Shown here: positions 1 through 20,380 of the stretch, one piece after another
Position numbering within the stretch: position 1 is the first letter of the stretch
How the letters are laid out: the number at the start of each line of letters is the position of its first letter
NCBI RefSeq assembly: GCF_039654945.1
Contig: NW_027361792.1
Location: 124,001 to 188,000, forward strand
Source of the DNA: Dendrobates tinctorius
Lineage: Eukaryota
DNA: 64,000 nt
Reading direction: 5' to 3'
Notes under the pieces: model-generated
The model's input: only the letters and a program-made list of their open reading frames with translations
Database searches by the model: none
What the model was told of the DNA's origin: nothing
Position numbers and translations under genes: made by a program

Positions 1-3000
1 ACCCCCCCGGTGTCCTCGCCCCCGGGTTCCAGGTCTGTCCCCCCCTCAGGAGGAACAGTACCCCCTGAGGGACGGACTCCGCCATCCCCTGAAGGACCCT
101 CCGGTGTTGCCCCCGGCCCAGCACCCTCGTCTGGCGGCTCATCATCTGAACCTCCGAGGGCGCTGAACCGGTTGGAGAGTCTGATCAGAGGGGGGTCAGC
201 GGGCCCTTCCGTGTGCACCCTGGTGGTCGGGGGCGGGGGAGACTTTGAAGGCTTGTCAGCCTTCTTCCCCCCCGTTTTGCGCTTGGCACGCCTGGTTTTG
301 CCACCTGATGCTGTAGGCTGCTCTCTGACATCCTCGTCGACACTTTCATAACGAGAGGAGTCGTCTGAGTCAGCCGCTTTCTCCTCTCTATCCATCCTCC
401 TGATCTCCTCACTCACCGCACTCTCCCCCAGGGCCTCAGAGGCTTTGGCCACGGGCCTGGAGGGAGGAGCAGGCATCACCCCGGTTGCCCGAGGCTCCAC
501 CTGTCCCCTACCTTCCTGGCGCTTTTCCTGCCTCCGCTGGTACGCGGGGCCCCTTGCAGCATTGCCCTTCCTCACTGGCCCCTCAGCCCTTCCTCCTCCG
601 CCACCACCTGTCACAGCAGAAGAAACGCCACCGGGGGTTGCCCCCCCCACGGTCTCCCCCCACAAGGCCTGCGGCGGCATTAGAGAAGGAGCGAGGGCAG
701 CGGCTGAGAGGGTGACCTAGGTCACCACACAGGTGGCACCGAATATCCTTACACAAGGCGGCCAGATGACCCACCACACAAGGCACATTTCTGCACCTTG
801 CAGTTGGCGCTGAAGTGGGTGGGGTCGCCGCACTTGTGGCAGACCTTCGGTTGCCCCTGGTAGAAGACCAGGATCCTGTCCCTTCCCAGGAACGCCGAGG
901 AAGGGATGTGGGTGACCGTGCCGCCTGAAACCTTCAATTTAACCATGAAAGTCCAGCCCCCCGACCAGATGCCGAATTCGTCCCTGTTCTTTTTTGGGAC
1001 CTCGGTGACCTCCCCGTAACGGGAAAGCCACGTCATGATGTCCATGCCTGCGAGTGACTCGTTACATGTAACCACGGTCACTCGCTTGACGGAATTTTGG
1101 CAAGACACCGCTTGAGCCACGAAGTCTCACCATCCGGGCTCTTCTCGCACCAGCTCGTAATTCGACCAAAAGAGCTCAAGCCCCTATGGCCGCACGAAGC
1201 TGACGTCGAAGAAGCGGGAAGCCGAAGGATGTATCAGGGCAAAGATGTCATTCGCCCCGAAGCCCATCTTAAGGAGGAGCTCCACCACCTTGCTCCTAGG
1301 TGGACAAGCTTCACTGCCCCCCCACCTAAGACGGACCACATTCCTTCTTGGCGGCCCCTGCCCGGCTGTGGGGAGAGACCAAACAGTCCCTCCCTCCCTT
1401 TGATTTTGGAAGGCAGCAAGGCCGTGTCTCTCTATCCAGAAAGACAAGTCCACCGTCCTCCCCTCTACCACTATTGATCTATCTCCCCTTTTGAGAGCCT
1501 CCAGGAAACGGCGGTGCGAAACGCCGTCCCTGGAGCCCGGAGGCGAGGAGACCCCCCAGAACCACCCCGACCCCCAGCCGCGGCCCCCGCATAATTGCGT
1601 TGGGGTCTCGCGGCCGGAGTGGCAGATGGGCCAGCCCTCACACCACTACCACCACTTGTGCCAGCACCCTCATTCGTCCTCCCAGTCACTCTCCCATTCA
1701 CTCTTTTATTATTTGCATTCACCCCACCATTCACTCCAGCACACTCACCCACATTCACAGTAGCACTCACTCCCTCATCCATGTCACTCATATCACCATT
1801 CACTTCAGCAAACATCTCCTCAAATATGTCCACTCCACTTTCGTACTCACTCTCACTCGCACAATTGGTGAACATAGCAACATTATTTACATTTTTTACA
1901 TTTCCCGAACCAGTGTAGTTCCTCTCTTTGCCTGCTGGGGGCCCTGAGCTCTCTTGCTGGGAGCTACTCCAGCTCCTGTCCAGGAGCGCTGCTGCCCCTT
2001 TAAATGCCTCAGTGCTGATGACATCATGCACTCTGCCCTGGCTGGGCCTAGGAGCAACAGCAGCTCCTGGTTTCAGCTCCATTTTTTTTTCTTTTTCCGA
2101 GTTTTGTTTACTCTGGGCAGGGACGGCCACTGGCACCGCTCCCTGCCCTGCACTTTTCTTCACCCCCGCTGCCGGCTTGCCAGGGAGCGCCAGAGTCCCC
2201 GCACCCTCAGATGAAGGTAGGTGGGCCGGGGACCCCGACAACTCCCCGCCAGCTTTTGGGGGCAGCACAGCATTACTTGGAAGGGTGGGTGGGACAGAGT
2301 ACAGCGGGCCCGCAGTGGCCACGCCCCCCCGCCGGTCGCAGCCACCCCAGGCAGAGCCCCCCCCGGGTGACGCGAGCACAGCGGGCGGAGCCGCGACCGC
2401 TGAGGCCACGCCCCCCGCCAGTCACAGCCACCACGGGCAGAGCAGCGACCCCTTGCGAGGCCACGCCCCCCGGGTGACGCGGACGCAGCGGGTGGGACGA
2501 CGGCCGAGGAGGACATGCCCCCCCCCGCACGGCACAGCCTTTGCAGGCCGGGCAACACTCGGGGAGGCCACGCCCCCCTCACGGACCACCGCCGCCACCC
2601 TATGCCCACCACTTGAGACAGGCAAGGCCGGCCACTCCCCCTCGTCGCCCAGCGGCGGCGGAGCCCCCTGCACGGACCCCTTTTTGGGTCGACGTGCCGG
2701 AGACCCCGCTCTCACCACAGGCGCCGACATGGGAGCGACCAGCACTTTGCACCGCCTCAGCTGCTGCTTGATGTTCTGTTCGCCCTTCCTAGGCTTCTGG
2801 ACCCCCACTAGCGATCCAGACTTAGCGGATCCGTACGTGGGGGGTCCAGAAGCCCCAGCACTCGCCGCCGGAGGTGCGGCCCTGGCTGTACCAACTTTAC
2901 CTGGTGCCAGGCCAGCCCCCCCTGCCACCGAGGGCTGAGCCCGGACACCACCACCACAACCAGCACCGACCTCCATGTCGCTGCCCTGGTCTGAACTGTC

Positions 3001-4216
3001 ACCAGATGCGACAGTCAGGTCACAACAGTCATCTCTCTCCCCGCTCCCTCGCTGCGGACCCACCACAGGGCCCGAGCCGGGGTGGGTAGCGGGTTCCACA
3101 CAGCGGGACAGAGGGGCCCCGGGAAGAGGAGCAAAAACCAGTTGTTCCTCCACGCCTTCAGAGGCCTTACGCCTGCGCCTCCTGTTTCTTCTCCTCCCGG
3201 TTGCCTCATCCTCCGGGCAGACTTCATCCCCAAACAACAGCGTGCCAAACCGTGCTGGGGATTCCGTCTGCCGTACTTGTTTAAGGATGAGGCAGCCCCC
3301 CTCAGAACTACTCCCGCTCCCTCCATCCTCCCCCTCGCTCCCGCTTTCCTCCGCGTTACTGGAGTCCAGCGGGAGGGCCACCTGCTCGGGGGCTATCCCG
3401 CTGCATGTTACCTGGCTCACGCTGGTGTCCGCCAGGTCTTCAGGTGGAGGTGGCCCGGATGTGGTGTGGGTGCCATCTTGCTCTTCCTCCTCCTCGCTTT
3501 CCTCCACCTGGATGGGGACTCCTGACCCCCCCAGGAGACCCACCGGCCATGGCCCTGAACCGGTCCTCGTTCTGCAGCTTCTCCTGGAAGGGGCCGCTGC
3601 CGGCCATGATGGTACTTCGCCGGTCCTCCAGGGCCCGAATCTCCCCTTTCAGCTGCTTGACCGTGGCGGTGACCTCCGCTCTCTTTGAGGCAGGGAGCCT
3701 GTTTTTACTGATGACCCAGGCTCCCTCCAACTCCCCCCGGAGTCTCCTGAGCTGCTTGCCGGCCTCCTCATACTCGGAGAGGTGGGCATGAATGCGGGAG
3801 GCGTAGGTGGTAGCTGGCTCTCCCGCAACCTTGGAGCCCCAGACGTTAAGGGGGGGCCCCGCCTCACCTCTGCCGGCTGCTGCACCTCCGGGGGAAGGGC
3901 CCGCCACAGCCTTCACTTCGGGGGTCCCGGACCCTGGAGCCTTGCGGCCCCCTGGGGTCCGCTTTTTCCCCATCCCTGGGACTGGCTGGCTGTGCCTTGG
4001 GCCTCCTGGTGGTGGATGAGGCCCCCCACCCCCAGCTGGCTTGCCGAAGGGTGGGAGCCAGGGGCACAGCCCCGGCGCTCAGTCCCAGGTAGAGTCCTCT
4101 TTCCTGGGAAGGGGGCAGATGGAAAGTCCTTGCAGGAAAAACCTCCCTTCCCAGGAGCTTAGCAAAAGCCTAGCCTGCAGAGCTCAGCCCAGACGCTCCT
4201 CCTCTTCCTGGGCGTG
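1..4216 (-). mobile_element. Tx1/L1-clade non-LTR retrotransposon, 5' part (5'UTR plus broken ORF1); ORF2 would lie left of the window. Lies in NDUFS3 intron 1
   Basis: Minus-strand ORF pieces 3440-3973, 2422-3543, 1471-2409, 1184-1471, 749-1120 and 583-786 join into a gag-like ORF1. It has three CCHC knuckles (CHKCGDPTHFSANC, CALCG/GHLAALC, CHLCGDLGHPLSRC), the preceding 'FFDVSF...WLSRYGEV...GIWSGGW...FYQGQPKVC' block typical of Tx1 ORF1/ZCCHC3-like proteins, and a C-terminal 'SNRFSAL' motif. In-frame stops (~1184, ~1127) and frameshifts show decay. Confidence 0.8.
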
Positions 4217-7200
4217 CCCAGAGCTGCACTCAGTATGCTGCTGGTGCAGTCACTGTGTACATACATTACATTACTGATCCTGAGTTACATCCTGTATTAT
4301 ACTCCAGAGCTGCACTCACTATTCTGCTGGTGCAGTCACTGTGTACATTACTGATCCTGAGTTACCTCCTGTATTATACCCCAGAGCTGCACTCACTATT
4401 CTGCTGGTGCAGTCACTGTGTACGTACATTACTGATCCTGAGTTACATCCTGTATTATACTCCAGAGCTGCACTCACTATTCTGCTGGTGCAGTCACTGT
4501 GTACATTACTGATCCTGAGTTACCTCCTGTATTATACCCCAGAGCTGCACTCACTATTCTGCTGGTGCAGTCACTGTGTACGTACATTACTGATCCTGAG
4601 TTACATCCTGTATTATACTCCAGAGCTGCACTCACTATTCTGCTGGTGCAGTCACTGTGTACATACATTACTGATCCTGAGTTACATCCTGTATTATACC
4701 CCAGAGCTGCACTCACTATTCTGCTGGTGGAGTCACTGTGTACATACATTACATTACTGATCCTGAGTTACCTCCTGTATTATACTCCAGAGCTGCACTC
4801 ACTATTCTGCTGGTGCAGTCACTGTGTACATACATTACTGATCCTGAGTTACCTCCTGTATTATACCCCAGAGCTGCACTCACTATTCTGCTGGTGCAGT
4901 CACTGTGTACATACATTACATTACTGATCCAGAGTTACCTCCTGTATTATACTCCAGAGCTGCACTCACTATTCTGCTGGTGCAGTCACTGTGTACATAC
5001 ATTACTGATCCTGAGTTACCTCCTGTATTATACCCCAGAGCTGCACTCACTATTCTGCTGGTGCAGTCACTGTGTACATACATTACATTACTGACCCTGA
5101 GTTACATCCTGTATTATACTCCAGAGCTGCACTCACTATTCTGCTGGTGCAGTCACTGTGTACATACATTACATTACTGACCCTGAGTTACATCCTGTAT
5201 TATACTCCAGAGCTGCACTCACTATTCTGCTGGTGCAGTCACTGTGTACATACATTACTGATCCCGAGTTACATCCTGTATTATACTCCAGAGCTGCACT
5301 CACTATTCTGCTGGTGCAGTCACTGTGTACATACATTACATTACTGACCCTGAGTTACATCCTGTATTATACTCCAGAGCTGCACTCACTATTCTGCTGG
5401 TGCAGTCACTGTGTACATACATTACTGATCCTGAGTTACATCCTGTATTATACCCCAGAGCTGCACTCACTATTCTGCTGTTGCAGTCACTGTGTACATA
5501 CATTACATTACTGATCCTGAGTTACATCCTGCACTATACTCCAGAGCTGCACTCACTATTCTGCTGGTGCAGTCACTGTGTACATACATTACTGATCCTG
5601 AGTTATATCCTGTATTATACTCCAGAGCTGCACTCACTATTCTGCTGGTGCAGTCACTGTGTACATACATTACATTACTGATCCTGAGTTACATCCTGTA
5701 TTATACTCCAGAGCTGCACTCACTATTCTGCTGGTGCAGTCACTGTGTACATACATTACATTACTGATCCTGAGTTACCTCCTGTATTATACCCCAGAGC
5801 TGCACTCACTATTCTGCTGTTGCAGTCACTGTGTACATACATTACTGATCCTGAGTTACATCCTGCACTATACTCCAGAGCTGCACTCACTATTCTGCTG
5901 GTGCAATCACTGTGTACATACATTACTGATCCTGAGTTATATCCTGTATTATACTCCAGAGCTGCACTCACTATTCTGCTGGTGCAGTCACTGTGTACAT
6001 ACATTACATTACTGATCCTGAGTTACATCCTGTATTATACTCCAGAGCTGCACTCACTATTCTGCTGGTGCAGTCACTGTGTACATACATTACATTACTG
6101 ATCCTGAGTTACATCCTGTATTATACTCCAGAGCTGCACTCACTATTCTGCTGGTGCAGTCACTGTGTATGTACATTACTGATCCTGAGTTACATCCTGT
6201 ATTATACCCCAGAGCTGCACTCACTATTCTGCTGGTGCACTCACTGTGTACATACATTACATTACTGATCCTGAGTTACATCCTGTATTATACTCCAGAG
6301 CTGCACTCACTATTCTGCTGGTGCAGTCACTGTGTACATACATTACATTACTGATCCTGAGTTACCTCCTGTATTATACTCCAGAGCTGCACTCACTATT
6401 CTGCTGGTGCAGTCACTGTGTACATACATTACTGATCCTGAGTTACATCCTGTATTATACTCCAGAGCTGCACTCACTATTCTGCTGGTGCACTCACTGT
6501 GTACATACATTACATTACTGATCCTGAGTTACATCCTGTATTATACTCCAGAGCTGCACTCACTATTCTGCTGGTGCAGTCACTGTGTACATACATTACT
6601 GATCCTGAGTTACATCCTGTATTATACTCCAGAGCTGCACTCACTATTCTGCTGTTGCACTCACTGTGTACATACATTACATTACTGATCCTGAGTTACA
6701 TCCTGCACTATACTCCAGAGCTGCACTCACTATTCTGCTGGTGCAGTCACTGTGTACATACATTACTGATCCTGAGTTATATCCTGTATTATACTCCAGA
6801 GCTGCACTCACTATTCTGCTGGTGCAGTCACTGTGTACATACATTACATTACTGATCCTGAGTTACATCCTGTATTATACTCCAGAGCTGCACTCACTAT
6901 TCTGCTGGTGCAGTCACTGTGTACATACATTACATTACTGATCCTGAGTTACCTCCTGTATTATACCCCAGAGCTGCACTCACTATTCTGCTGTTGCAGT
7001 CACTGTGTACATACATTACATTACTGATCCTGAGTTACATCCTGCACTATACTCCAGAGCTGCACTCACTATTCTGCTGTTGCACTCACTGTGTACATAC
7101 ATTACATTACTGATCCTGAGTTACATCCTGCACTATACTCCAGAGCTGCACTCACTATTCTGCTGTTGCACTCACTGTGTACATACATTACATTACTGAT

Positions 7201-8060
7201 CCTGAGTTACCTCCTGTATTATACCCCAGAGCTGCACTCACTATTCTGCTGTTGCAGTCACTGTGTACATACATTACATTACTGATCCTGAGTTACATCC
7301 TGCACTATACTCCAGAGCTGCACTCACTATTCTGCTGTTGCACTCACTGTGTACATACATTACATTACTGATCCTGAGTTACATCCTGCACTATACTCCA
7401 GAGCTGCACTCACTATTCTGCTGGTGCAGTCACTGTGTACATACATTACTGATCCTGAGTTATATCCTGTATTATACTCCAGAGCTGCACTCACTATTCT
7501 GCTGGTGCAGTCACTGTGTACATACATTACATTACTGATCCTGAGTTACATCCTGTATTATACTCCAGAGCTGCACTCACTATTCTGCTGGTGCAGTCAC
7601 TGTGTACATACATTACATTACTGATCCTGAGTTACATCCTGTATTATACCCCAGAGCTGCACTCACTATTCTGCTGTTGCAGTCACTGTGTACATACATT
7701 ACATTACTGATCCTGAGTTACATCCTGTATTATACTCCAGAGCTGCACTCACTATTCTGCTGGTGCAGTCACTGTGTACATACATTACATTACTGATCCT
7801 GAGTTACATCCTGTATTATACCCCAGAGCTGCACTCACTATTCTGCTGGTGCAGTCACTGTGTACATACAATACATTACTGATCCTGAGTTACATCCTGT
7901 ATTATACTCCAGAGCTGCACTCACTATTCTGCTGGTGCAGTCACTGTGTACATACATTACATTACTGATCCTGAGTTACCTCCTGTATTATACTCCAGAG
8001 CTGCACTCACTATTCTGCTGGTGCAGTCACTGTGTATATACATTACATTACTGATCCTGA
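4217..8060. repeat. Tandem satellite, 81/86-bp unit (ccagagctgcactcactattctgctggtgcagtcactgtgtacatacatt[acatt]actgatcctgagttacatcctgtattatact), ~46 copies
   Basis: Direct periodicity; unit length varies by an ACATT pentamer; it accounts for the many 'MYIHYITDPEL' ORFs. Confidence 0.97.
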
Positions 8061-8111
8061 CTTTCCAGTGAGCCGCCAGTGCTGAGACTTGTAGTACTAC
8101 GCTGCCCTCAC

Positions 8112-8157
8112 CTCCCCGGAGCAGACCCCGCTGCGCCGCCCGCACTGCAGTCAGCAT
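8112..8157 (-). CDS. NDUFS3: NADH:ubiquinone oxidoreductase core subunit S3, first coding exon (start of mitochondrial presequence, MLTAVRAAQRGLLRG-G)
   Basis: AAGATG start; Arg/Ala/Leu-rich presequence-like peptide with no acidic residues; phase-1 donor G|GTGAGG at 8111; head-to-head with KBTBD4, as in other vertebrates. Identity rests mainly on synteny because the later exons are outside the window. Confidence 0.7.
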
Positions 8158-8159
8158 CT

Positions 8160-8560
8160 TTCCACCTGACGGACAGACAAGGGCACACGAAATAGAGCGG
8201 AAGTCACTACAGCCTCTCCGGTCCTCCCAGTAAAGCGTTCCTGATAACTTCCGGTGTAGATTCCAGCGCTCTGGGTTCCTGACCTAGAACGTTCCGGTGT
8301 CAGACTGCGTGGGAAGGCTCGGGGAGCTCCGGGGCCGGTGAGTGATGGCTGCTGGGAGCTGACGCTGCTGAATCCCGTCCCGCGGTCTGTCGGTGCCTTC
8401 CTGACGCGTTCACAGCACGTTTCTCGGCTTTTTCCTCCATGAACCCTGGCGTATGACGTCACCCGACTACAATCCCCGTCACTCTCCCTTGTGACTCTTC
8501 TTTGTTGTTTTTCCTTCCATACTTTGTAGTCGGCGCGGTGTGACCCCGGCGGGTAATGCT
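8160..8560. promoter_or_regulatory. CpG-rich bidirectional promoter NDUFS3/KBTBD4
   Basis: ETS/GABP cores CGGAAGT 8198-8204, CTTCCGG ~8248 and TTCCGG ~8292; perfect CRE TGACGTCA 8454-8461; ACTACAATCCC (ZNF143/THAP11-type) 8466-8476; divergent first exons on both sides. Confidence 0.7.
8250..8337 (+). other. KBTBD4: Probable non-coding first exon of KBTBD4 (start approximate)
   Basis: Donor CCG|GTGAGT at 8338; no ATG upstream within the exon; nearest CpG promoter to the exon-2 acceptor at 12246. Confidence 0.55.
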
Positions 8561-8783
8561 GGGCGTGGGCAGTGTCAGTGCTGCCAGGTACCTGTGGCAT
8601 GGCGGCTGTGCCCTGGAGAGACGGTCACTGGCTCAGTGTAGTGCTCCGTCCATGGCTGGGTCACCTCTCCGGCCATGTATTTGGGGGTTTTACACCCCAG
8701 GGGCTCTGGCACCCGCCGACTCGTCCTTGGGGCGCCTGGTATTGTGCCCCCGTCACATATGAGGGACAAAACCATAACCACCA

Positions 8784-11499
8784 CCCCCAGCGTGCAGCGA
8801 CCCTGACCCCCCCCAGCGTGCAGCGACCCTGACCCCCCCCAGCGTGCAGCGACCCTGACCCCCCCAGCGTGCAGCGACCCTGACCCCCCCAGCGTGCAGC
8901 GACCCTGACCCCCCCAGCGTGCAGCGACCCTGACCCCCCCCAGCGTGCAGCGACCCTGACCCCCCCAGCGTGCAGCGACCCTGACCCCCCCAGCGTGCAG
9001 CGACCCTGACCCCCCCAGCGTGCAGCGACCCTGACCCCCCCAGCGTGCAGCGACCCTGACCCCCCCAGCGTGCAGCGACCCTGACCCCCCCCAGTGTGCA
9101 GCGACCCTGACCCCCCCCAGCGTGCAGCGACCCTGACCCCCCCCAGCGTGCAGCGACCCTGACCCCCCCAGCGTGCAGCGACCCTGACCCCCCCAGCGTG
9201 CAGCGACCCTGACCCCCCCCAGCGTGCAGCGACCCTGACCCCCCCCAGCGTGCAGCGACCCTGACCCCCCCCAGCGTGCAGCGACCCTGACCCCCCCCAG
9301 CGTGCAGCGACCCTGACCCCCCCCAGCGTGCAGCGACCCTGACCCCCCCAGCGTGCAGCGACCCTGACCCCCCCCAGCGTGCAGCGACCCTGACCCCCCC
9401 CAGCGTGCAGCGACCCTGACCCCCCCCAGCGTGCAGCGACCCTGACCCCCCCAGCGTGCAGCGACCCTGACCCCCCCCAGCGTGCAGCGACCCTGACCCC
9501 CCCCAGCGTGCAGCGACCCTGACCCCCCCAGCGTGCAGCGACCCTGACCCCCCCAGCGTGCAGCGACCCTGACCCCCCCAGCGTGCAGCGACCCTGACCC
9601 CCCCAGCGTGCAGCGACCCTGACCCCCCCAGCGTGCAGCGACCCTGACCCCCCCAGCGTGCAGCGACCCTGACCCCCCCCAGCGTGCAGCGACCCTGACC
9701 CCCCCCAGCGTGCAGCGACCCTGACCCCCCCCAGCGTGCAGCGACCCTGACCCCCCCAGCGTGCAGCGACCCTGACCCCCCCAGCGTGCAGCGACCCTGA
9801 CCCCCCCCAGCGTGCAGCGACCCTGACCCCCCCCAGCGTGCAGCGACCCTGACCCCCCCCAGCGTGCAGCGACCCTGACCCCCCCCAGCGTGCAGCGACC
9901 CTGACCCCCCCCAGCGTGCAGCGACCCTGACCCCCCCCAGCGTGCAGCGACCCTGACCCCCCCCAGCGTGCAGCGACCCTGACCCCCCCCAGCGTGCAGC
10001 GACCCTGACCCCCCCCAGCGTGCAGCGACCCTGACCCCCCCCAGCGTGCAGCGACCCTGACCCCCCCCAGCGTGCAGCGACCCTGACCCCCCCCAGCGTG
10101 CAGCGACCCTGACCCCCCCCAGCGTGCAGCGACCCTGACCCCCCCCAGCGTGCAGCGACCCTGACCCCCCCCCAGCGTGCAGCGACCCTGACCCCCCCCA
10201 GCGTGCAGCGACCCTGACCCCCCCCAGCGTGCAGCGACCCTGACCCCCCCCAGCGTGCAGCGACCCTGACCCCCCCCAGCGTGCAGCGACCCTGACCCCC
10301 CCCAGCGTGCAGCGACCCTGACCCCCCCCAGCGTGCAGCGACCCTGACCCCCCCCAGCGTGCAGCGACCCTGACCCCCCCCAGCGTGCAGCGACCCTGAC
10401 CCCCCCCAGCGTGCAGCGACCCTGACCCCCCCCAGCGTGCAGCGACCCTGACCCCCCCCAGCGTGCAGCGACCCTGACCCCCCCCAGCGTGCAGCGACCC
10501 TGACCCCCCCCAGCGTGCAGCGACCCTGACCCCCCCCAGCGTGCAGCGACCCTGACCCCCCCCAGCGTGCAGCGACCCTGACCCCCCCCCAGCGTGCAGC
10601 GACCCTGACCCCCCCCAGCGTGCAGCGACCCTGACCCCCCCCAGCGTGCAGCGACCCTGACCCCCCCCAGCGTGCAGCGACCCTGACCCCCCCCAGCGTG
10701 CAGCGACCCTGACCCCCCCCAGCGTGCAGCGACCCTGACCCCCCCCAGCGTGCAGCGACCCTGACCCCCCCCAGCGTGCAGCGACCCTGACCCCCCCCAG
10801 CGTGCAGCGACCCTGACCCCCCCCAGCGTGCAGCGACCCTGACCCCCCCCAGCGTGCAGCGACCCTGACCCCCCCCAGCGTGCAGCGACCCTGACCCCCC
10901 CCAGCGTGCAGCGACCCTGACCCCCCCCAGCGTGCAGCGACCCTGACCCCCCCCAGCGTGCAGCGACCCTGACCCCCCCCAGCGTGCAGCGACCCTGACC
11001 CCCCCCAGCGTGCAGCGACCCTGACCCCCCCCAGCGTGCAGCGACCCTGACCCCCCCCAGCGTGCAGCGACCCTGACCCCCCCCAGCGTGCAGCGACCCT
11101 GACCCCCCCCAGCGTGCAGCGACCCTGACCCCCCCCAGCGTGCAGCGACCCTGACCCCCCCCAGCGTGCAGCGACCCTGACCCCCCCCAGCGTGCAGCGA
11201 CCCTGACCCCCCCCAGCGTGCAGCGACCCTGACCCCCCCCAGGGTGCAGCGACCCTGACCCCCCCCAGCGTGCAGCGACCCTGACCCCCCCCAGCGTGCA
11301 GCGACCCTGACCCCCCCCAGCGTGCAGCGACCCTGACCCCCCCCAGCGTGCAGCGACCCTGACCCCCCCCAGCGTGCAGCGACCCTGACCCCCCCCAGCG
11401 TGCAGCGACCCTGACCCCCCCCAGCGTGCAGCGACCCTGACCCCCCCCAGCGTGCAGCGACCCTGACCCCCCCCCAGCGTGCAGCGACCCTGACCCCCT
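8784..11499. repeat. Minisatellite, 25-27-bp unit (agcgtgcagcgaccctga + C7-9), ~104 copies, KBTBD4 intron 1
   Basis: Near-perfect periodicity; the three ~950-aa minus-strand ORFs are its translations. Confidence 0.98.
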
Positions 11500-12275
11500 T
11501 GCTGGGCGAGCCACAGGCCGTGCATGGAATTAAAGGGATTGTCCAGACGTGATCTGACATCGGTGGGCACTAGCACCCGGACATGGTGCGCCGACGCCGT
11601 GCAGACCGCTGGAAGGGTGTGACGCCTGAAGCCCCCACCATGTCGGATTCTGATGACGGCGTGCCCCTTACGGACTCCTGTCAGGCGCAGTATTCCTTGT
11701 GTCTGACATCAGGCGCCTCAGTAGTGCAGCCTCAGGCTTCCAGCCTGTTAAGGAGAATCTCTCAATACGATCTCTTTTGGTCACACCTGGATTTTTTTGT
11801 GGCCCCCAAGTGTCAAACCTTTGTCCTGACTGTCTGGGGGCTGATTGCCGCGATGGGTAGGTACTAGTGATGCACCACACCGTCATCCATTGGACCCCCT
11901 ATATCCGCACAATTGGGCTCTCCTGACCCCGGCCTGTGCACAGTCAGGAGCTGATGGGCTGCAGATGTGCTTTAGGTTTTGGGGAGAGTGAGACCGTAAA
12001 TCTCATAAAGTACAAAGCAGGGAATCCTTCAGGGTCTCCCCCTTTCTGGGGTGTAAGTGCAGGGACCCGGCTCCACCTCCTGGACTCCTGCCTTCTGTGC
12101 TCACCGGGTGGAGGTGCGCTGTAAATCTACTCCGTCCATTCAGACTTGTGTAAATGTTTCTCGCGCCGTCATTGACACCTGGTTGATCACTGCGACTCGT
12201 AGATTCCATCACTAAGCCTTGTTTTTGCGTCTGCTTTGCTTCCCAGGCACTTGCATCTCAGGCGTATTGTAGACC

Positions 12276-12882
12276 ATGGACCCTTCTTCAGATGAAGCGG
12301 CGTCTCAGAACCTGGCCGGCACCTCTGAGGAGAATTACTTTGTGACGTACACGTTTACGGATCGCTCCCACAGCAGCCGGGTGGCTCAGAGCATCATGAA
12401 GCTGTGCATGGAGGAGCAGCTGTTTGCGGACGTCACCATCCTGGTGGAGGGGAAGGAGTTCCAGTTGCACCGGCTGGTTCTGTCGGCCCAGAGCTGCTTC
12501 TTTCGCTCCATGTTTGCGTCCAATCTAAAGGAGGGACGTAACCGCGTGATCCAGCTGCAGGACGTCAGCGCCCGCGTGTTCCAGTTACTGGTGGATTACA
12601 TCTATCATGGGACTGTGAAGCTGCGGCTGGAGGAGTTGCAGGAGACCTACGAGGTGGCGGACATGTACCAACTGATCTCTTTGTTTGAAGAATGCTCTCG
12701 CTTCCTGGTGCGGACGGTGCAGGTGAAGAACTGTCTGCAGATCATGTGGTTGGCGGATCAGCACAGCGACACCTCCCTTTACACTGCGGCGAAACACTGC
12801 GCCAAAACCCACCTGTCACAGCTGTGTGATAGCGAGGAGTTCCTGAACCTGCCACTGCGATTACTCACAGACATCCTAGCAG
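12276..12882 (+). CDS. KBTBD4: Kelch repeat and BTB domain-containing protein 4, coding exon 1 (BTB plus start of BACK)
   Basis: EENYFVTYTFTDRSHSSRVAQSIMKLC...FADVTILVEGKEFQLHRLVLSAQSCFFRSMF matches KBTBD4. Acceptor tcccag|G 12246; Kozak ACCATGG with in-frame upstream TAG; phase-1 donor CAG|GTGAGT. Confidence 0.95.
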
Positions 12883-12934
12883 GTGAGTGACTGCGCTCAG
12901 CCTGATCCCTAAGGGCTCATACTCATCTGCGAAG

Positions 12935-13560
12935 AAAACGGACGAGTGCAATCTGATAAAAAAAAAATCTGATTGCACTCGGACCAATGTTAATCTATGA
13001 GTCACAGCGAGGCACTTATGGATGCGCCTTTCTGGGGCGGCTGGGAGCTGATGTTTTACGTCTGGGAGGGGGTCAATATCCATGGCTCCTTGCTAGCCTA
13101 TTAATATTAGCCTGCATCTTTCTGCCTAGCCTTTGCTGGTTATTAATTGTAGTGGGACCCTGCTCCCTTTTTTTTTTTTTTTTTATTTATATATAGGGGT
13201 CCTCTATTTTAATACCCATTGAAGGCTAAGATACAGTTGTGAGCCGAAATTAATAGGAACCTCCATGGGTATTACCGCCATTCCCGGGCTATAAATACCT
13301 GCTCCTAGCTGTTGGCTTTCCCTCTGCTGGTTAACAAAATTACACAGGACCCCACAACATTTTTTTTTTTTTCAGAAGAATAATCATTTATTAAAAACTC
13401 ACAGTAAAATGCACAAGCACTGTAAATGACAGTAATTCTCTATGTAGATCTCATGTTAAACTCGCATTGCAATCGGATGCTAGGTGTGAAAAATTGTGTG
13501 GCGCTTGCATGTCACTAGTCCTACTTTTCTGGATGAAAATCATACCCTTTTTTTTTCCAC
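12935..13560. mobile_element. Degenerate non-autonomous DNA-transposon (MITE-like) fragments
   Basis: Short inverted repeat gagtgcaatc...gattgcactc and T-rich internal blocks resembling anuran MITEs; boundaries approximate. Confidence 0.4.
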
Positions 13561-13914
13561 TGTGATGGGTCACTGTGCAGTCGCTGCAAACATATAATTC
13601 TCAACGTGCCCCAACAACCAGGTGCATGCTGGGAATTGTAGTTTCCCCAATCTCAGGGATGATTGCGGTATAGGCAAAAAGTGACCTGTCCTGAGGCTGA
13701 AAACTGAATCGCTGCACTAAGTGATCTGCGGTCTCTCAACTCCCCCCTATACTGCTGCTTCATTAGGGGCATGTGCACACAATACACACAAGCTTATCCA
13801 CTGTGGAATTTCCAGACAGGAGAATCCCAGGACGTCCATTTTGGGTATCCATCGTCTTCCACCCCAGTGCATTCACGTAATGCCCCCCTCCCACACCCCA
13901 TACTCTTTATGCGT

Positions 13915-14365
13915 GCATGTAGCACTTTCAAAGACAAGTCCTGCAATATCTTTACATGGCCGGTCCAATCCTCAATTACTGGGAAATCAGGATTTGAATT
14001 GATATGCAAATGAGGCTGAAGGACTCTGGTAGATCTGAAGCTTCTGTCACTCCAGCTCTATTTTCTGCCTACTACCGCCACCTCCTTCTTAATTGATGGC
14101 TCCTCTTCCTGAAGTCACAGAGCATTGAGGATGTCAGCAAGCAGGAGGAGGCAGTGCTGGGTGAGGCTTAGAGCTGAAGTGACAGAGGCTTCAGATCTAC
14201 AGTAGCTCTTCAGCCTCATTTGCATATCAAGTTAAACGGTGATTTCTCATTAATAAAGGAATGGACTGGACATGTAAATGTATTGCTCGACTTGTCTTTA
14301 AGAGGACTACATCTGCATATAAGTAGTTTAATGGGGGACATCCTGCTCACAGATTCCCTTTTAAA
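13915..14365. mobile_element. Foldback MITE (T2/Kolobok-like)
   Basis: Long imperfect inverted arms (ttgatatgcaaatgaggctgaag...agatctgaagcttctgtcact versus agtgacagaggcttcagatct...cttcagcctcatttgcatatcaa); ends in ccct-tttaa. Confidence 0.65.
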
Positions 14366-14419
14366 GGGAGCCTGACAGCTGATGCATGCTGCCCGATCCA
14401 CGTGCACGCTGTCAGAATT

Positions 14420-14686
14420 CTCCAGTGCCTGCAGCGATCATGTGACCGCAGATATGCGATATGCATACTTCTGGCCACATTCCAACTAGACTTGCCTCAC
14501 TTAGTTCACTTCACTTGCACCGAGCGAGGCCGCACACGTCTAGTTGGAATGTGGCCGGGATTATACATTATCGCACAGCTGCAGTCACATGACCGCCTGG
14601 CCGCGCGCGCTGTGAGGCTTCACAAGTCTGTAGTCGTATAGAGTGACTTATAGACTATTGTGCTTGACCTGGACATCCCCTCTAAG
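14420..14686. mobile_element. Foldback MITE fragment
   Basis: Inverted arms ggccacattccaactagac / gtctagttggaatgtggcc; T2-like end ggacatcccctctaa. Confidence 0.55.
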
Positions 14687-15154
14687 TCCCCTATGGAGAG
14701 AAAAAAAAGTCAACTACTATTCCCCAGCTAAGGATAAAGAAATATATATTATATTTTATATCTCGGCCTCCATAAAAGTCCGATCAATTGAGATACAAAA
14801 TAGAGTACTCTGAAGGGGAAGTGTAAAGAACCGGCACAGAAAAGCCAGAAGTCTCAGAAAATGCTGACACAAACCAATTTTTTTTTTTTCCTATAGAAAG
14901 TACACCTTTTTTTTTTTTTTTTTCACCTTCTGAAATGGTAAAATAAAACGTGTATGTGGCTGGTTAATCGCAATTGCGCTGAGCTGGAGAAACAATAATA
15001 ATAATAATAATAGGGCATAAAAAGGAAGTTTCCGTTCACTGACGGAGTCGGAGTTCTTATAAAGTGTGAGCTGTTCCCTTCCGCTCGCTGTAAATTCCCA
15101 TCGTCCACAATGTCATCCTGTCAGGTTCTTCCTGATTCTTCTTCTTCCCACCAG

Positions 15155-15261
15155 ACGGCGTTCCCTGTTCTCAGAATCCGAGCGCGGCCATAAAGAGCTG
15201 GATCCACTACAATAAGGAGGAACGGGAGGGATTCTCCGAGGTGCTGATCTCCAGCCTGAAG
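15155..15261 (+). CDS. KBTBD4: KBTBD4 coding exon 2 (107 nt, DGVPCSQNPSAAIKSWIHYNKEEREGFSEVLISSLK)
   Basis: Pyrimidine tract plus ccag| acceptor, AAG|GTAGG donor, phases fit the flanking exons; not shown as such in the ORF track. Confidence 0.93.
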
Positions 15262-15340
15262 GTAGGAACAGTCCGCAGGGGAATCGCTGCAACACTACGG
15301 TTTACTTTTTGCTACATTTCAATAACGCCCATCCTCGCTG

Positions 15341-18321
15341 GTGCAGAGCAGCGCAGCTGTGATAGAAAGGGCTCGGGACACGCAGAGCATCGCAGCTGTG
15401 ATAGAAAGGGCTCGGGACACGCAGAGCATCGCAGCTGTGATAGAAAGGGCTCGGGACACGCAGAGCATCGCAGCTGTGATAGAAAGGGCTCGGGACACGC
15501 AGAGCAACGCAGCTGTGATAGAAAGGGGTAAAAACACGCGGCACATCGCAGCTGTGATAGAAAGGGCTCGGGACACACGGAGCAACGTAGCTGTGATAGA
15601 AAGGGCTCGGGACACGCAGAGCATCGCAGCTGTGATAGAAAGGGCTCGGGACACGCAGAGCATCGCAGCTGTGATAGAAAGGGCTCGGGACACGCAGAGC
15701 ATCGCAGCTGTGATAGAAAGGGCTCGGGACACGCAGAGCATCGCAGCTGTGATAGAAAGGGCTCGGGACACACGGAGCAGCGCAGCTGTGATAGAAAGGG
15801 CTCGGGACACACGGAGCAGCGCAGCTGTGATAGAAAGGGCTCGGGACACGCAGAGCATCGCAGCTGTGATAGAAAGGGCTCGGGACACGCAGAGCATCGC
15901 AGCTGTGATAGAAAGGGCTCGGGACACACGGAGCAGCGCAGCTGTGATAGAAAGGGCTCGGGACACACGGAGCAACGCAGCTGTGATAGAAAGGGCTCGG
16001 GACACACGGAGCAACGCAGCTGTGATAGAAAGGGCTCAGGACACGCAGAGCATCGCAGCTGTGATAGAAAGGGCTCGGGACACGCAGAGCATCGCAGCTG
16101 TGATAGAAAGGGCTCGGGACACGCAGAGCATCGCAGCTGTGATAGAAAGGGCTCGGGACACGCAGAGCAACGCAGCTGTGATAGAAAGGGGTAAAAACAC
16201 GCGGCGCATCGCAGCTGTGATAGAAAGGGCTCAGGACACGCAGAGCATCGCAGCTGTGATAGAAAGGGCTCGGGACACGCAGAGCATCGCAGCTGTGATA
16301 GAAAGGGCTTGGGACACGCAGAGCATCGCAGCTGTGATAGAAAGGGCTCGGGACACGCAGAGCATCGCAGCTGTGATAGAAAGGGCTCGGGACACGCAGA
16401 GCATCGCAGCTGTGATAGAAAGGGCTCGGGACACGCAGAGCATCGCAGCTGTGATAGAAAGGGCTCGGGACACGCAGAGCATCGCAGCTGTGATAGAAAG
16501 GGCTCGGGACACGCGGAGCATCGCAGCTGTGATAGAAAGGGCTCGGGACACACGGAGCAGCGCAGCTGTGATAGAAAGGGCTCGGGACACACGGAGCAAC
16601 GCAGCTGTGATAGAAAGGGCTCGGGACACACGGAGCAACGCAGCTGTGATAGAAAGGGCTCAGGACACGCAGAGCATCGCAGCTGTGATAGAAAGGGCTC
16701 GGGACACGCAGAGCATCGCAGCTGTGATAGAAAGGGCTCGGGACACGCAGAGCAACGCAGCTGTGATAGAAAGGGGTAAAAACACGCGGCACATCGCAGC
16801 TGTGATAGAAAGGGCTCAGGACACGCAGAGCATCGCAGCTGTGATAGAAAGGGCTCGGGACACGCAGAGCATCGCAGCTGTGATAGAAAGGGCTCGGGAC
16901 ACGCAGAGCATCGCAGCTGTGATAGAAAGGGCTCGGGACACGCAGAGCATCGCAGCTGTGATAGAAAGGGCTCGGGACACACGGAGCAGCGCAGCTGTGA
17001 TAGAAAGGGCTCGGGACACACGGAGCAGCGCAGCTGTGATAGAAAGGGCTCGGGACACGCAGAGCATCGCAGCTGTGATAGAAAGGGCTCGGGACACACA
17101 GAGCATCGCAGCTGTGATAGAAAGGGCTCGGGACACACGGAGCAGCGCAGCTGTGATAGAAAGGGCTCGGGACACACGGAGCAACGCAGCTGTGATAGAA
17201 AGGGCTCGGGACACACGGAGCAACGCAGCTGTGATAGAAAGGGCTCAGGACACGCAGAGCATCGCAGCTGTGATAGAAAGGGCTCGGGACACGCAGAGCA
17301 TCGCAGCTGTGATAGAAAGGGCTCGGGACACGCAGAGCATCGCAGCTGTGATAGAAAGGGCTCGGGACACGCAGAGCAACGCAGCTGTGATAGAAAGGGG
17401 TAAAAACACGCGGCGCATCGCAGCTGTGATAGAAAGGGCTCAGGACACGCAGAGCATCGCAGCTGTGATAGAAAGGGCTCGGGACACGCAGAGCATCGCA
17501 GCTGTGATAGAAAGGGCTCGGGACACGCAGAGCATCGCAGCTGTGATAGAAAGGGCTCGGGACACGCAGAGCATCGCAGCTGTGATAGAAAGGGCTCGGG
17601 ACACGCAGAGCATCGCAGCTGTGATAGAAAGGGCTCGGGACACGCAGAGCATCGCAGCTGTGATAGAAAGGGCTCGGGACACGCAGAGCATCGCAGCTGT
17701 GATAGAAAGGGCTCGGGACACGCAGAGCATCGCAGCTGTGATAGAAAGGGCTCGGGACACGCAGAGCATCGCAGCTGTGATAGAAAGGGGTCGGGACGCG
17801 CAGAGCATCGCAGCTGTGATAGAAAGGGCTCGGGACACGCAGAGCAACGCAGCTGTGATAGAAAGGGCTCGGGACACGCAGAGCAACGCAGCTGTGATAG
17901 AAAGGGGTAAAAACACGCTGCGCATCGCAGCTGTGATAGAAAGGGCTCGGGACACACGGAGCAACGCAGCTGTGATAGAAAGGGCTCGGGACACGCAGAG
18001 CATCGCAGCTGTGATAGAAAGGGCTCGGGACACGCAGAGCATCGCAGCTGTGATAGAAAGGGCTCGGGACACGCAGAGCATCGCAGCTGTGATAGAAAGG
18101 GCTCGGGACACGCAGAGCATCGCAGCTGTGATAGAAAGGGCTCGGGACACGCAGAGCATCGCAGCTGTGATAGAAAGGGCTCGGGACACGCAGAGCATCG
18201 CAGCTGTGATAGAAAGGGCTCGGGACGCGCAGAGCATCGCAGCTGTGATAGAAAGGGGTCGGGACGCGCAGAGCATCGCAGCTGTGATAGAAAGGGGTCG
18301 GGACGCGCAGAGCATCGCAGC
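15341..18321. repeat. Minisatellite, 39-bp unit (gcagagcatcgcagctgtgatagaaagggctcgggacac), ~76 copies
   Basis: Direct periodicity; 13-aa repeats in the 1000-aa ORFs on both strands. Confidence 0.98.
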
Positions 18322-19300
18322 TCACTGTCTGTGGAGCTGCAGACCGGTCTCATTGCCTGTGGAAAGCTGCTACAATGGACACCTGATCAGACGTGGAGCG
18401 ATGGATAAAGGTGCCCGTTCTGGTGAATCCGATTCTTCTTCAGGTGGAGCTCGGGTGCGGCGCTTCCCTGTGCAAGGTGTGGGAACACCTGGGTATGTAC
18501 AGATCCGCACGGCCTCACATAATGTAGTGGGTTCTCATGGCGTCCGACATCATATCCAGTAGCCACAATCCGCCTTGTGCTTCTTTTCATTTTTCATCTC
18601 CTCCTTTACACTTGGTGACGTCGTTGGCAGTGATTTCCGTACATAGCGCCATGTTCTTCTGCTAGGATCATTTTCACATCGATTTCCTGGGACTTCTCTC
18701 CTGGACAGAGAAGCGAGTGGATTTGCAGGACCCTAGTCCAGCGGCCATGTCAGTCATCAATGGCTGTCGTAAGAGGGAGCCCTGTTAGCCACCTTCTTCC
18801 TGCCCGTATGCCCCACTCCGCTTCGGATTTGTAGGTACGGCACAATGTCATGGTGGTGGCATGACGGCCATATGATGTAGCGCCAGGATGGCTAATCAAA
18901 AGAAGGATCGGGGATGCAGGTAGGAGGTGGATTCACAGGGCTCCCGTCCGTCGGCCATGGAGCACTGGCATGGCCGCTAGATGGAGGTCCGGCAAATTGA
19001 CTGGCTCCGCTATAGTAGGTGGTAAATGTAACCTCCATATAATGAAAAGCAAAACTGATGCTCTGCGCGTTGTGACTAATTTCTGTATTAGTTGCACTGC
19101 TCTGCGCGTTGTGACTCCTTTCTATCTTGGTTGCGATGCTCTGGGCGTTGACACCTTTCCTATAGTACCTGCGATGCTCTGCGTGTTCTGACACCTTTCT
19201 ATGATCGCTCGCAGTACATGTGTCACCGTCGCTCGTTTACCATATCTCCAAGGAGAAACGTTGCCCCTTAGACCTCAGAGGCCGCTCATACAGCTGAATT

Positions 19301-19363
19301 GGGTCTGTTGCCTTGCACTGAGGAGGGGCAAACGCCCCGAAACACTTGTCTGCATACAGATTC
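19301..19363 (+). ncRNA. Type-I hammerhead ribozyme motif (retrozyme/satellite-2-like) in the last KBTBD4 intron
   Basis: UGCA-CUGAGGA-GGGGC-AAAC-GCCCC-GAAAC-ACUU-GUC^UGCA: all core nucleotides present, stem II 5 bp, stem III 2 bp, stem I 4 bp plus internal loop plus 8-bp extension (GGGUCUGU/ACAGAUUC). Confidence 0.85.
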
Positions 19364-19519
19364 TGTACAAAAAGCCAAAAACGCATGCTAATTAATTTGA
19401 TGCATCTTTTAAGCGTTTCTGCAGCGTCTGATCCGGCTCAAACGCTGCGGAAACGCTTAACAAAACGCATCGTGGGCACACAGCCTTAATTGTTTCCATG
19501 TGTATTTTATGTCTTTAAG

Positions 19520-20380
19520 GAAATCGGGGAAAACGTGCACATCTATCTGATCGGGAAGGAGGAATCTCGCACGCACTCCCTTGCCGTCTCTCTCCATTGT
19601 GCGCAGGACGATTCTATAAGTGTAAGCGGACAGAACAGTCTGTGCCACCAGATCACTGCCGCGTGCAAACATGGTGCCGATCTCTACGTGGTAGGAGGGT
19701 CCATACCTCGTCGAATGTGGAAGTGTAATATGGAGACCATGGACTGGGAGCGATGCGCACCACTACCCCGGGACCGTCTGCAGCATACGCTGGTGTCCGT
19801 GCCCGGCAAGGATGCCATCTACTCCCTGGGGGGTAAGACCCTGCAGGACTCGCTCTCTAACGTGGTGATTTACTACCGAGTACCGGACAATGTCTGGACA
19901 GAGACTAGTCAGCTGGAGGTCTCCATCTCCGGGGCGGCGGGGGTGAACCTGAACGGGCTTATCTACCTAATGGGAGGCGAGGAGAACGATCTGGACTTCT
20001 TCACCAAACCCTCCCGTGTCATCCAGTGTTTCGATACCACCACAGAGAAGTGCCACGTCAAACCCTACCTGCTGCCGTTTGCGGGTCGAATGCACGCGGC
20101 CGTTCACAAGGACCTGGTGTTCATCGTAGCGGAGGGGGACTCGCTGGTGTGTTATAACCCGTTGCTGGACAGCTTCACCCGGCTGTGCCTGCCCGAGGTC
20201 TGGAGCTCACGGCCGGCGCTCTGGAAAATCGCCAGCTGCAACGGCTGCATCTACGTGTTTCGGGACCAATACAAGAAAGGGGACGCCAACACCTTCAAGT
20301 TAAACCCCGCCACCTCAGTGGTGACCGTCACCAGCGGCATTCGCTTTCTGCTTACCAATCTGCAGTTTTTATTGGCATGA
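19520..20380 (+). CDS. KBTBD4: KBTBD4 last coding exon (Kelch beta-propeller); total CDS 607+107+861=1575 nt, 524 aa
   Basis: EIGENVHIYLIGKEESRTHSLAVSLHC...LYVVGGSIPRRMWKC...LLTNLQFLLA*; acceptor ttttatgtctttaag|G; GG Kelch motifs. Confidence 0.95.
   Translation, partial: EIGENVHIYLIGKEESRTHSLAVSLHCAQDDSISVSGQNSLCHQITAACKHGADLYVVGGSIPRRMWKCNMETMDWERCAPLPRDRLQHTLVSVPGKDAIYSLGGKTLQDSLSNVVIYYRVPDNVWTETSQLEVSISGAAGVNLNGLIYLMGGEENDLDFFTKPSRVIQCFDTTTEKCHVKPYLLPFAGRMHAAVHKDLVFIVAEGDSLVCYNPLLDSFTRLCLPEVWSSRPALWKIASCNGCIYVFRDQYKKGDANTFKLNPATSVVTVTSGIRFLLTNLQFLLA

What the first reader, a model, noticed from the sequence alone, without database searches (positions are those of the whole stretch)
19225..19366. 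Canonical hammerhead ribozyme in sense orientation in the last KBTBD4 intron
Seen: a complete type-I hammerhead. Core CUGAGGA 19318-24, stem II GGGGC/GCCCC, GAAA 19339-42, GUC cleavage triplet (cut after 19350), stem I UGCA/UGCA extended by an internal loop (UGCCU/U) and an 8-bp helix. It lies on the KBTBD4 pre-mRNA strand, 170 nt upstream of the 3' splice site. Known: type-I hammerheads with a very short stem III occur in amphibian satellite-2/non-LTR retrozymes, cleave best as dimers through a palindromic loop III, and use stem I internal loop-loop II contacts for activity. Inference: this is a solitary retrozyme fragment that could cut nascent KBTBD4 RNA and affect splicing or output. Its helix III (ACACTTGT) is one substitution from the palindrome ACACGTGT, which may attenuate it.
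Basis: partly seen in the sequence, partly recalled or inferred. Interest (0 to 1): 0.85.

Follow-up and report, generated by a model that had tools for sequence, protein, structure and literature searches.

The report
Decayed lone hammerhead in frog intron
The hammerhead ribozyme motif in the last intron of this frog's KBTBD4 gene is real, but it is a single worn copy of a repeat family common in frog genomes and most likely does nothing to the gene.

Summary
On the + strand, 19301-19363 holds a type I hammerhead with an intact catalytic core (CUGAGGA 19318-24, GAAA 19339-42, GUC with C17 at 19350). It lies in sense in the last intron (15262-19519) of a KBTBD4 orthologue, 169 nt before the 3' splice site.

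It is not a chance match. Contigs from this species and from a related one show that 19297-19354 belongs to a multi-copy family. With the family's majority letters the motif is the canonical animal hammerhead: helix I of 6 bp, helix II of 4 bp and a CAAACA loop.

This copy differs from that majority at structural positions:
- It appears to lack 2 nt in the 3' strand of helix I, leaving 4 bp instead of 6.
- It has C for U at 19312.
- It has G for A at 19334, which closes loop 2.

Folding gives the catalytic helix I register about 2% probability here, against 85-97% with the family letters. No second copy lies nearby to form a dimer. Published work shows that amphibian hammerheads are weak as monomers and that slow ribozymes in introns do not disturb splicing.

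Verdict: an ordinary, decayed, solitary retrozyme-type fragment. Cleavage in the animal could not be tested because no raw RNA reads were available. The scan has already noted many hammerhead retrozymes elsewhere in this genome.

The parts
19301..19308 (+). Distal stem of helix I, 5' strand (GGGUCUGU)
   Evidence: Pairs with 19356-63 (pair probability 0.98). The family majority has C at 19307.
19309..19313 (+). Internal loop of helix I (UGCCU). Its UGC can also pair with 19352-54 in a slipped, inactive register.
   Evidence: Slipped-register pairs have P 0.87-0.96. The family majority has U at 19312.
19314..19317 (+). Helix I proximal, 5' strand (UGCA)
   Evidence: Catalytic-register pair probability is about 0.02 in this copy.
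19318..19324 (+). Core box CUGAGGA (C3-A9, N7 = G)
   Evidence: Aligned to the Hammerhead_1 consensus.
19325..19338 (+). Helix II with loop 2 (GGGGC AAAC GCCCC). In the family majority it is a 4-bp stem with loop CAAACA.
   Evidence: G19334 is A in 63 of the family contigs of X1 and 59 of X8.
19339..19342 (+). Core box GAAA (G12-A15.1)
19343..19348 (+). Helix III, C-G pair closing the loop ACUU. Only 2 bp when A15.1-U16.1 is counted.
   Evidence: Pair probability is 0.004 in the thermodynamic model.
19349..19350 (+). U16.1 and C17. The predicted scissile bond is between 19350 and 19351.
   Evidence: Position within the motif. Cleavage itself was not tested.
19351..19355 (+). Helix I proximal, 3' strand (UGCA) plus the single loop base U19355. 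Two family letters (AA) appear to be missing after 19354.
   Evidence: 41 contigs in X1 and 41 in X8 stop matching after 19354 and continue with AAUGGAGUUUCUGG. Alignment; reading explained in the full report.
19356..19363 (+). Distal stem of helix I, 3' strand (ACAGAUUC)
   Evidence: It corresponds to the family's GGAGUUUC, with both sides changed at pair 19307/19357.
15262..19519 (+). Last intron of the KBTBD4 orthologue, host of the motif
   Evidence: Donor AG|GUAGGA at 15261/15262 and acceptor UUAAG|G at 19519/19520. Exon matches to KBTBD4.
19520..20380 (+). Coding part of the last KBTBD4 exon (kelch propeller)
   Evidence: Matches PDB KBTBD4 residues 231-518 at E 2e-180. Kelch Pfam families.
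19203..19296 (.). Upstream flank inside the reported range. It is a repeat with 10-25 times more contig depth than the ribozyme piece, so probably another element.
   Evidence: Depth 2837-6713 (X1) and 7376-17341 (X8), against 547 and 716 for 19297-19335.
19367..19490 (.). Very high-copy hairpin repeat between the ribozyme and the 3' splice site. It is not part of the ribozyme.
   Evidence: Self-complementary over 19399-19471. Contig depth up to 59959 against a single-copy depth of 4.8. Weak miRNA-model hit below threshold.

Best explanation
This is a solitary, partly decayed copy of the canonical type I hammerhead carried by amphibian non-LTR retrozymes, which are relatives of the terminal repeats of Penelope-like elements. 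It was left in the last intron of KBTBD4 by an old insertion, among other repeat fragments.

The catalytic core is intact, but three things make it a very slow or inactive ribozyme:
- The copy has lost the family's 6-bp helix I and its open loop 2.
- It folds preferentially into a slipped register.
- It has no neighbouring copy with which to form the dimer that such short-helix-III motifs need.

It is transcribed passively as part of the intron, removed with the lariat, and has no appreciable effect on KBTBD4 expression.

Shown: the motif, its family membership, its differences from the family majority, the fold preference in a thermodynamic model, and the presence of the insertion in a related species. 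Inferred: low activity and no effect on the gene.
For: - Motif and core are complete.
- Family: 23, 48 and 63 contigs in X1 and 18, 48 and 59 in X8 overlap 19307, 19312 and 19334. The summed depth is about 110 times the single-copy depth.
- With the majority letters (C19307, U19312, A19334, and AA after 19354) the motif has helix I of 6 bp, an internal loop, a distal stem and a 4-bp helix II with a 6-nt loop. That is the published canonical animal architecture (PMC4209133).
- Catalytic-register pairs have probability 0.85-0.97 with the family letters and 0.02 in this copy. The hammerhead structure is 5-6 kcal/mol above the minimum-energy fold.
- No other copy in 64 kb.
- A depth-8 contig of the related organism B spans 18401-19365 with 67 differences, so the insertion predates the split of the two species and the locus has drifted by about 6-7%.
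- Literature: weak monomer activity (PMC7229834, PMC7761336); 8 of 9 Xenopus dimers inactive, and 44% of X. tropicalis copies overlap introns (10.64898/2026.07.22.740005); slow intronic ribozymes do not affect splicing (PMC2995048, PMC10919898).
Against: - All core positions are intact, and helix II is stronger than in the family, so some cleavage cannot be excluded.
- Nearest-neighbour folding ignores the tertiary and core interactions that stabilise the active fold.
- The distal stem is perfectly paired here (three 3'-strand differences from the family all keep or improve pairing). That could mean structural selection, or simply a subfamily.
- The family letters come from short contigs and from a loose-end consensus with only 0.68 agreement. 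42 variant rows were not shown.
- No RNA data were available, so activity in the animal is untested.
Confidence: 0.8

Rival explanations
1. The motif is an active intronic ribozyme. It cuts the nascent KBTBD4 transcript 169 nt before the 3' splice site and so lowers or tunes production of the spliced mRNA, as proposed for the RECK hammerhead and the CPEB3 ribozyme.
For: The core is intact and helix II is strong. The motif is in sense in the intron. The insertion is present in a related species. There is precedent for domesticated intronic ribozymes (PMC6155905, PMC10919898, PMC3088659).
Against: - Helix III has only 2 bp, and there is no partner copy for a dimer.
- Helix I is shortened and a slipped fold is favoured.
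- Loop 2 is closed by the private G19334.
- Only 169 nt separate the cut site from the splice site, so the polymerase reaches the exon within seconds. Related monomers cleave 6-22% per hour (PMC7229834).
- Slow ribozymes leave splicing intact (PMC2995048).
- The orthologous contig shows ordinary drift across the locus.
Confidence: 0.06
2. The piece comes from the terminal repeat (pLTR) of an autonomous Penelope-like element, not from a non-coding retrozyme unit.
For: Penelope-like elements are present in this genome and window (earlier notes s1-376855 and s1-366882). Xenopus retrozyme families are sister to pLTRs (10.64898/2026.07.22.740005). Only about 70 nt are left, so the parent element cannot be read directly.
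Against: Published pLTR hammerheads of animals are minimal. They have no helix III, a long helix II (about 6 bp) with a bulge, and no loop-loop contacts (PMC4209133). With family letters, this motif has the canonical 6-bp/4-bp architecture and a 2-bp helix III with a tetraloop, as in retrozyme units (PMC7229834).
Confidence: 0.1
3. The motif is a chance match to the short hammerhead consensus.
For: The Rfam score is far below the family threshold. A minimal descriptor is expected to match by chance about once in a genome of this size (my estimate).
Against: 0 matches in 400 shuffled windows. Dozens of related contigs in two species share the motif, and their majority letters give the canonical structure. 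An 8-bp distal stem sits at the expected place.
Confidence: 0.02

Closest known systems
Canonical type I hammerheads of amphibian non-LTR retrozymes (newt satellite 2; axolotl HHR_Amex1/Amex2; Xenopus retrozyme families)
   Same: The core is the same. With family letters, helix I has 6 bp followed by an internal loop and a closing stem, helix II has 4 bp with a 6-nt loop beginning CAAA, and helix III has 2 bp with a tetraloop (as in HHR_Amex2). It belongs to a multi-copy family in a frog genome that the scan has found to hold many 317-353-nt hammerhead units.
   Different: It is a single fragment of about 70 nt rather than a tandem unit. Helix I proximal is cut to 4 bp, loop 2 is closed by a C-G pair, and N7 is G. 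The helix III octamer is not palindromic, so a dimer would carry two central mismatches.
Minimal hammerheads in the pLTRs of Penelope-like elements
   Same: Type I topology, frog host, dispersed single copies, and a presumed shared origin with retrozymes.
   Different: Those motifs lack helix III and have a longer, bulged helix II. This one has the canonical helices.
Domesticated intronic hammerheads of amniotes (Rfam HH9 in RECK, HH10 in C10orf118/CTCL)
   Same: A type I hammerhead in sense in an intron of a protein-coding gene, thought to descend from amphibian-like repeat hammerheads.
   Different: Those are conserved across classes of vertebrates and cleave efficiently as monomers. This one is shown only in two close species, with ordinary drift at the locus. 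It has a weak helix III and a disrupted helix I, and it gives no Rfam HH9/HH10 match.

Membership tests
Hammerhead ribozyme, type I | Conserved core: C3 U4 G5 A6 N7 G8 A9, G12 A13 A14, A15.1-U16.1, H17 | tested here: met
   CUGAGGA 19318-24, GAAA 19339-42, U19349, C19350.
Hammerhead ribozyme, type I | Three helices around the core, with helix I open and G10.1-C11.1 at the base of helix II | tested here: met
   Helix I has 4 bp plus an 8-bp distal stem, helix II has 5 bp starting G19325-C19338, and helix III has 2 bp. The catalytic register of helix I is disfavoured in the model, at P about 0.02.
Hammerhead ribozyme, type I | Score at or above the Rfam Hammerhead_1 (RF00163) gathering threshold | tested here: not met
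   14.6 bits against 34. The match is found only in a 77-nt search at E 0.34 and is absent.
Hammerhead ribozyme, type I | Site-specific self-cleavage after H17 | not testable with these tools
   Only assembled contigs were on offer, with no raw RNA reads.
Non-LTR retrozyme | Head-to-tail units of about 150-450 nt, each with a type I hammerhead | tested here: not met
   One motif only. There is no other copy of 19203-19366 in the window. At best this locus holds a fragment of a unit.
Non-LTR retrozyme | Multi-copy family in the genome sharing the ribozyme | tested here: met
   23-63 contigs in X1 and 18-59 in X8 lie over 19307-19334, and 41 contigs in each run continue with a common sequence after 19354.
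Non-LTR retrozyme | Expression as linear and circular RNAs of unit length | not testable with these tools
   No run on record as RNA holds the stretch.
Domesticated intronic hammerhead (HH9/HH10-like) | Conserved at the same intron position across distant taxa, with the core under constraint | tested here: inconclusive
   The orthologous contig of one close relative reaches 19365 with about 7% differences over 965 nt. Differences inside the motif are hidden by the family contigs. No distant species could be examined.
Domesticated intronic hammerhead (HH9/HH10-like) | Stable monomeric fold that permits fast cleavage | tested here: not met
   Helix III has 2 bp, and the hammerhead structure is 5-6 kcal/mol above the minimum-energy fold.

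The most novel reading that the evidence does not exclude
The worn motif still cleaves slowly and has been kept in two frog species because a low rate of intron scission just upstream of the branch site trims KBTBD4 output or speeds intron turnover. On this reading the perfectly paired distal stem, with both sides changed relative to the family, is a sign of selection on the structure after insertion. It would be an amphibian case of ribozyme domestication in progress.
Probability: 0.03. Interest if true: 0.6.

Novelty: already known. Interest (0 to 1): 0.1.

Why it matters
It matters little in itself. Frog genomes hold thousands of hammerhead motifs, and in Xenopus tropicalis about 44% of retrozyme copies overlap introns.

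The case is useful in two ways:
- It is a worked example of telling a live ribozyme from a relic. An intact core is not enough. The comparison with the family's own majority letters shows which private changes break the fold.
- It is a caution that a complete motif in sense within a gene does not imply regulation.

If the copy were active and conserved, it would bear on how the amniote intronic hammerheads arose from amphibian repeats.

Tried and rejected
- **Rfam.** Nothing at gathering thresholds over the whole window, and no hammerhead at E up to 10 over 801 nt. Only the 77-nt search gave a weak Hammerhead_1 match.
- **Public collections.** Exact-pattern scans for the core plus helix II found nothing in metagenome contigs or viral contigs. 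This is expected, as these collections are microbial.
- **Paper supplements.** Searches of two hammerhead papers for the helix II string found nothing. Two older papers (PMC2933863, PMC3334697) are not held.
- **Expression and cleavage in vivo.** All 24 runs are kept as contigs and none is on record as RNA, so starts and ends of RNA cannot be seen. Run X5 has very high depth on the exon and low depth on the intron. I could not tell whether it is RNA or a capture library, so I drew nothing from it.
- **An earlier reading of my own, rejected.** I first thought the family homology stops at 19354, 4 nt past the cut site, which would hint at a copy made from cleaved RNA, with the 8-bp distal stem being accidental. 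I dropped this for two reasons. First, the family continuation aligns with 19355-19365 once 2 nt are left out: 8 of 11 letters match, though the local alignment alone gives only p 0.09-0.14. Second, it forms the same distal stem, whereas an accidental perfect 8-bp stem at that spot would be about a 0.5% event by my estimate.
- **The hit at 62893-62937(-).** It has no helices and is a chance match to the loose pattern.

Full report
**1. What is in the sequence**

- Helix I, proximal part: UGCA (19314-17) pairs with UGCA (19351-54).
- Core box: CUGAGGA at 19318-24.
- Helix II: GGGGC (19325-29), loop AAAC, GCCCC (19334-38).
- Core box: GAAA at 19339-42.
- Helix III: C19343 and G19348 close the loop ACUU.
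- Cleavage triplet: U19349 and C19350 are positions 16.1 and 17, so the predicted cut is after 19350.
- Helix I, distal part: beyond an internal loop (UGCCU 19309-13 opposite U19355), GGGUCUGU (19301-08) pairs with ACAGAUUC (19356-63).

A descriptor requiring the core, G10.1-C11.1, at least 4 bp in helices I and II and at least 1 extra pair in helix III finds this site alone in both strands of the window. It finds none in 400 dinucleotide-preserving shuffles.

Rfam is much less impressed. Nothing reaches gathering scores in the window and no hammerhead appears at E up to 10 in 801 nt. Only a 77-nt search returns Hammerhead_1, full length, at 14.6 bits against a threshold of 34.

**2. Gene context**

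- The open frame 12276-12890 carries BTB and BACK domains, and 19520-20380 carries kelch repeats.
- Both match PDB chains of human KBTBD4, at E 3e-99 (residues 9-196) and E 2e-180 (residues 231-518).
- The missing 34 residues lie on a 107-nt exon at 15155-15261, which has a polypyrimidine tract and AG before it and GUAGGA after it.
- The last intron is therefore 15262-19519. The motif is in sense, and the cut site is 169 nt before the acceptor UUAAG|G.
- About 3 kb of this intron is a 39-bp minisatellite (15302-18322). Three and a half inverted copies lie at 19057-19202.

**3. Is there a family?**

The window holds no other copy of 19203-19520, so I laid public contigs on 18400-19560. The runs were X1 (DNA, same species), X5 (nature unclear), X8 (a related species, organism B) and X17.

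The stretch is a mosaic of repeats. Against a single-copy depth of 4.8 in X1, summed contig depths are:

| Stretch | Summed depth in X1 |
|---|---|
| 19141-19296 | 2434-6713 |
| 19297-19335 | 547 |
| 19375-19491 | 28683-59959 |

- The ribozyme piece is multi-copy. In X1, 23, 48 and 63 contigs overlap 19307, 19312 and 19334; in X8, 18, 48 and 59 do.
- Its upstream flank, 19203-19296, is 10-25 times more abundant, so it is probably another element.
- From 19367 onward a different, very abundant hairpin repeat begins.
- The majority of family contigs differ from this copy at three places: C for G at 19307, U for C at 19312 and A for G at 19334.
- In both species 41 contigs stop matching after 19354 and go on with AAUGGAGUUUCUGG.

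**4. What the family letters mean**

With U at 19312 and AA after UGCA, the proximal helix I becomes UUUGCA/UGCAAA, which is 6 bp. With A at 19334, helix II is 4 bp with the loop CAAACA. This is the architecture published for canonical animal type I hammerheads: helix I 6 bp, helix II 4 bp, and helix III 1-2 bp with a small loop (PMC4209133).

If two letters are left out, the family continuation aligns with 19355-19365 (U, then GGAGUUUC against ACAGAUUC, then UG), and it forms the same distal stem:

| Pair | Family majority | This copy |
|---|---|---|
| 19307/19357 | C-G | G-C |
| 19304/19360 | U.U | U-A |
| 19308/19356 | U.G | U-A |

The sequence alignment alone is weak (p 0.09-0.14 against shuffles). 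An accidental perfect 8-bp stem at exactly that place would be rarer still, about 0.5% by my estimate. I therefore take the distal stem as a family feature, and this copy as having lost 2 nt of the 3' strand.

Under the other reading, where homology ends at 19354, the consequence is the same: only 4 of the 6 proximal pairs remain.

**5. Consequence for folding**

- *This copy.* Over 19295-19370, the explicit hammerhead secondary structure has -17.7 to -18.5 kcal/mol against a minimum of -23.9. UGC 19309-11 pairs with GCA 19352-54 at probability 0.87-0.96, stacking on the distal stem. The catalytic register has 0.02.
- *Family letters.* The 6-bp catalytic helix I has 0.85-0.97, the slipped register has 0.02, and the minimum-energy fold shows helix I, the internal loop, the distal stem and helix II.

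The model ignores tertiary contacts, so this is an argument and not a measurement. It does locate the damage. The damage is in helix I and in loop 2, which G19334 can close with C19329, removing the two loop bases that flank the AAAC. It is not in helix III.

However, one search lists no majority difference at 19343-19350, although 42 rows were not shown. This is therefore probably how the family is. A dimer would have two central mismatches in any case, and no second copy exists within 64 kb.

**6. Age and conservation**

A depth-8 contig of organism B covers 18401-19365 with 67 substitutions and 28 gap positions. The insertion is therefore shared with a close relative, and the locus has drifted by roughly 6-7%. 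Differences inside the motif cannot be read, because family contigs swamp the 10% reporting threshold. I have no evidence for or against special constraint.

**7. How it most likely works**

Literature:
- Amphibian type I hammerheads cleave poorly as single motifs (6% and 22% in one hour for two axolotl units) and need dimers (PMC7229834, PMC7761336).
- Of nine Xenopus retrozyme dimers tested at 6 mM Mg, only one cleaved (preprint 10.64898/2026.07.22.740005).
- The same preprint finds 43.9% of X. tropicalis retrozyme copies overlapping introns, so an intronic copy is commonplace.
- Hammerheads placed in introns do not impair splicing unless cleavage is fast (Dye et al. 2006 and Fong et al. 2009, as summarised in PMC2995048 and PMC10919898).

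Here the polymerase needs only seconds to travel the 169 nt to the acceptor. At the published monomer rates, well under a few percent of transcripts would be cut before splicing (my estimate), and this copy is worse than an intact monomer.

The best-supported account is therefore a passive relic, transcribed with the intron and degraded with the lariat.

**8. Comparison and verdict**

- It works like, and descends from, the canonical type I hammerheads of amphibian retrozymes.
- At this locus it fails the tandem-unit criterion of a retrozyme, and it fails the Rfam threshold.
- It is not the minimal Penelope-type motif, and it shows none of the properties of the domesticated amniote intronic hammerheads.
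- The scan has already logged many hammerhead retrozyme arrays elsewhere in this genome.
- Verdict: a real motif of a known kind, ordinary, and probably inert. Confidence 0.8, interest 0.1.

Noticed in passing
window 15302-18322 and 19057-19202: A 39-bp minisatellite of about 77 copies fills 3 kb of the last KBTBD4 intron. It creates spurious open frames of about 1000 codons on both strands. Three and a half diverged copies lie in inverted orientation just upstream of the ribozyme. The unit is itself multi-copy in the genome.
   Followed up: partly
window 19367-19490: A hairpin repeat (arms 19399-19471) with roughly ten thousand times single-copy contig depth in three species ends about 30 nt before the 3' splice site, so the branch site probably lies at its edge. 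It gives a weak mir-722-like Rfam hit on the minus strand (29.7 bits, threshold 81). It looks like a MITE or SINE and not like a microRNA gene.
   Followed up: partly
Rfam gives only generic hairpin (miRNA-model) matches below threshold and no hammerhead match. Helix I next to the core would have mismatches at 1.1-2.1 and 1.3-2.3.
   Followed up: partly
window 18712-18803 and 18916-19006: A pair of inverted repeats, about 76% alike, inside the intron. Both overlap stretches of raised contig depth (up to 489 in X1), so they are pieces of another dispersed repeat.
   Followed up: no
window 19492-19560, run X5: Run X5 shows a summed depth of about 11900 on the first 30-40 nt of the last exon but only 3-5 on the intron. 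I could not tell whether the run is RNA or an exon-capture library, so its raised depth over the ribozyme piece (92 against 5) is left unexplained.
   Followed up: no
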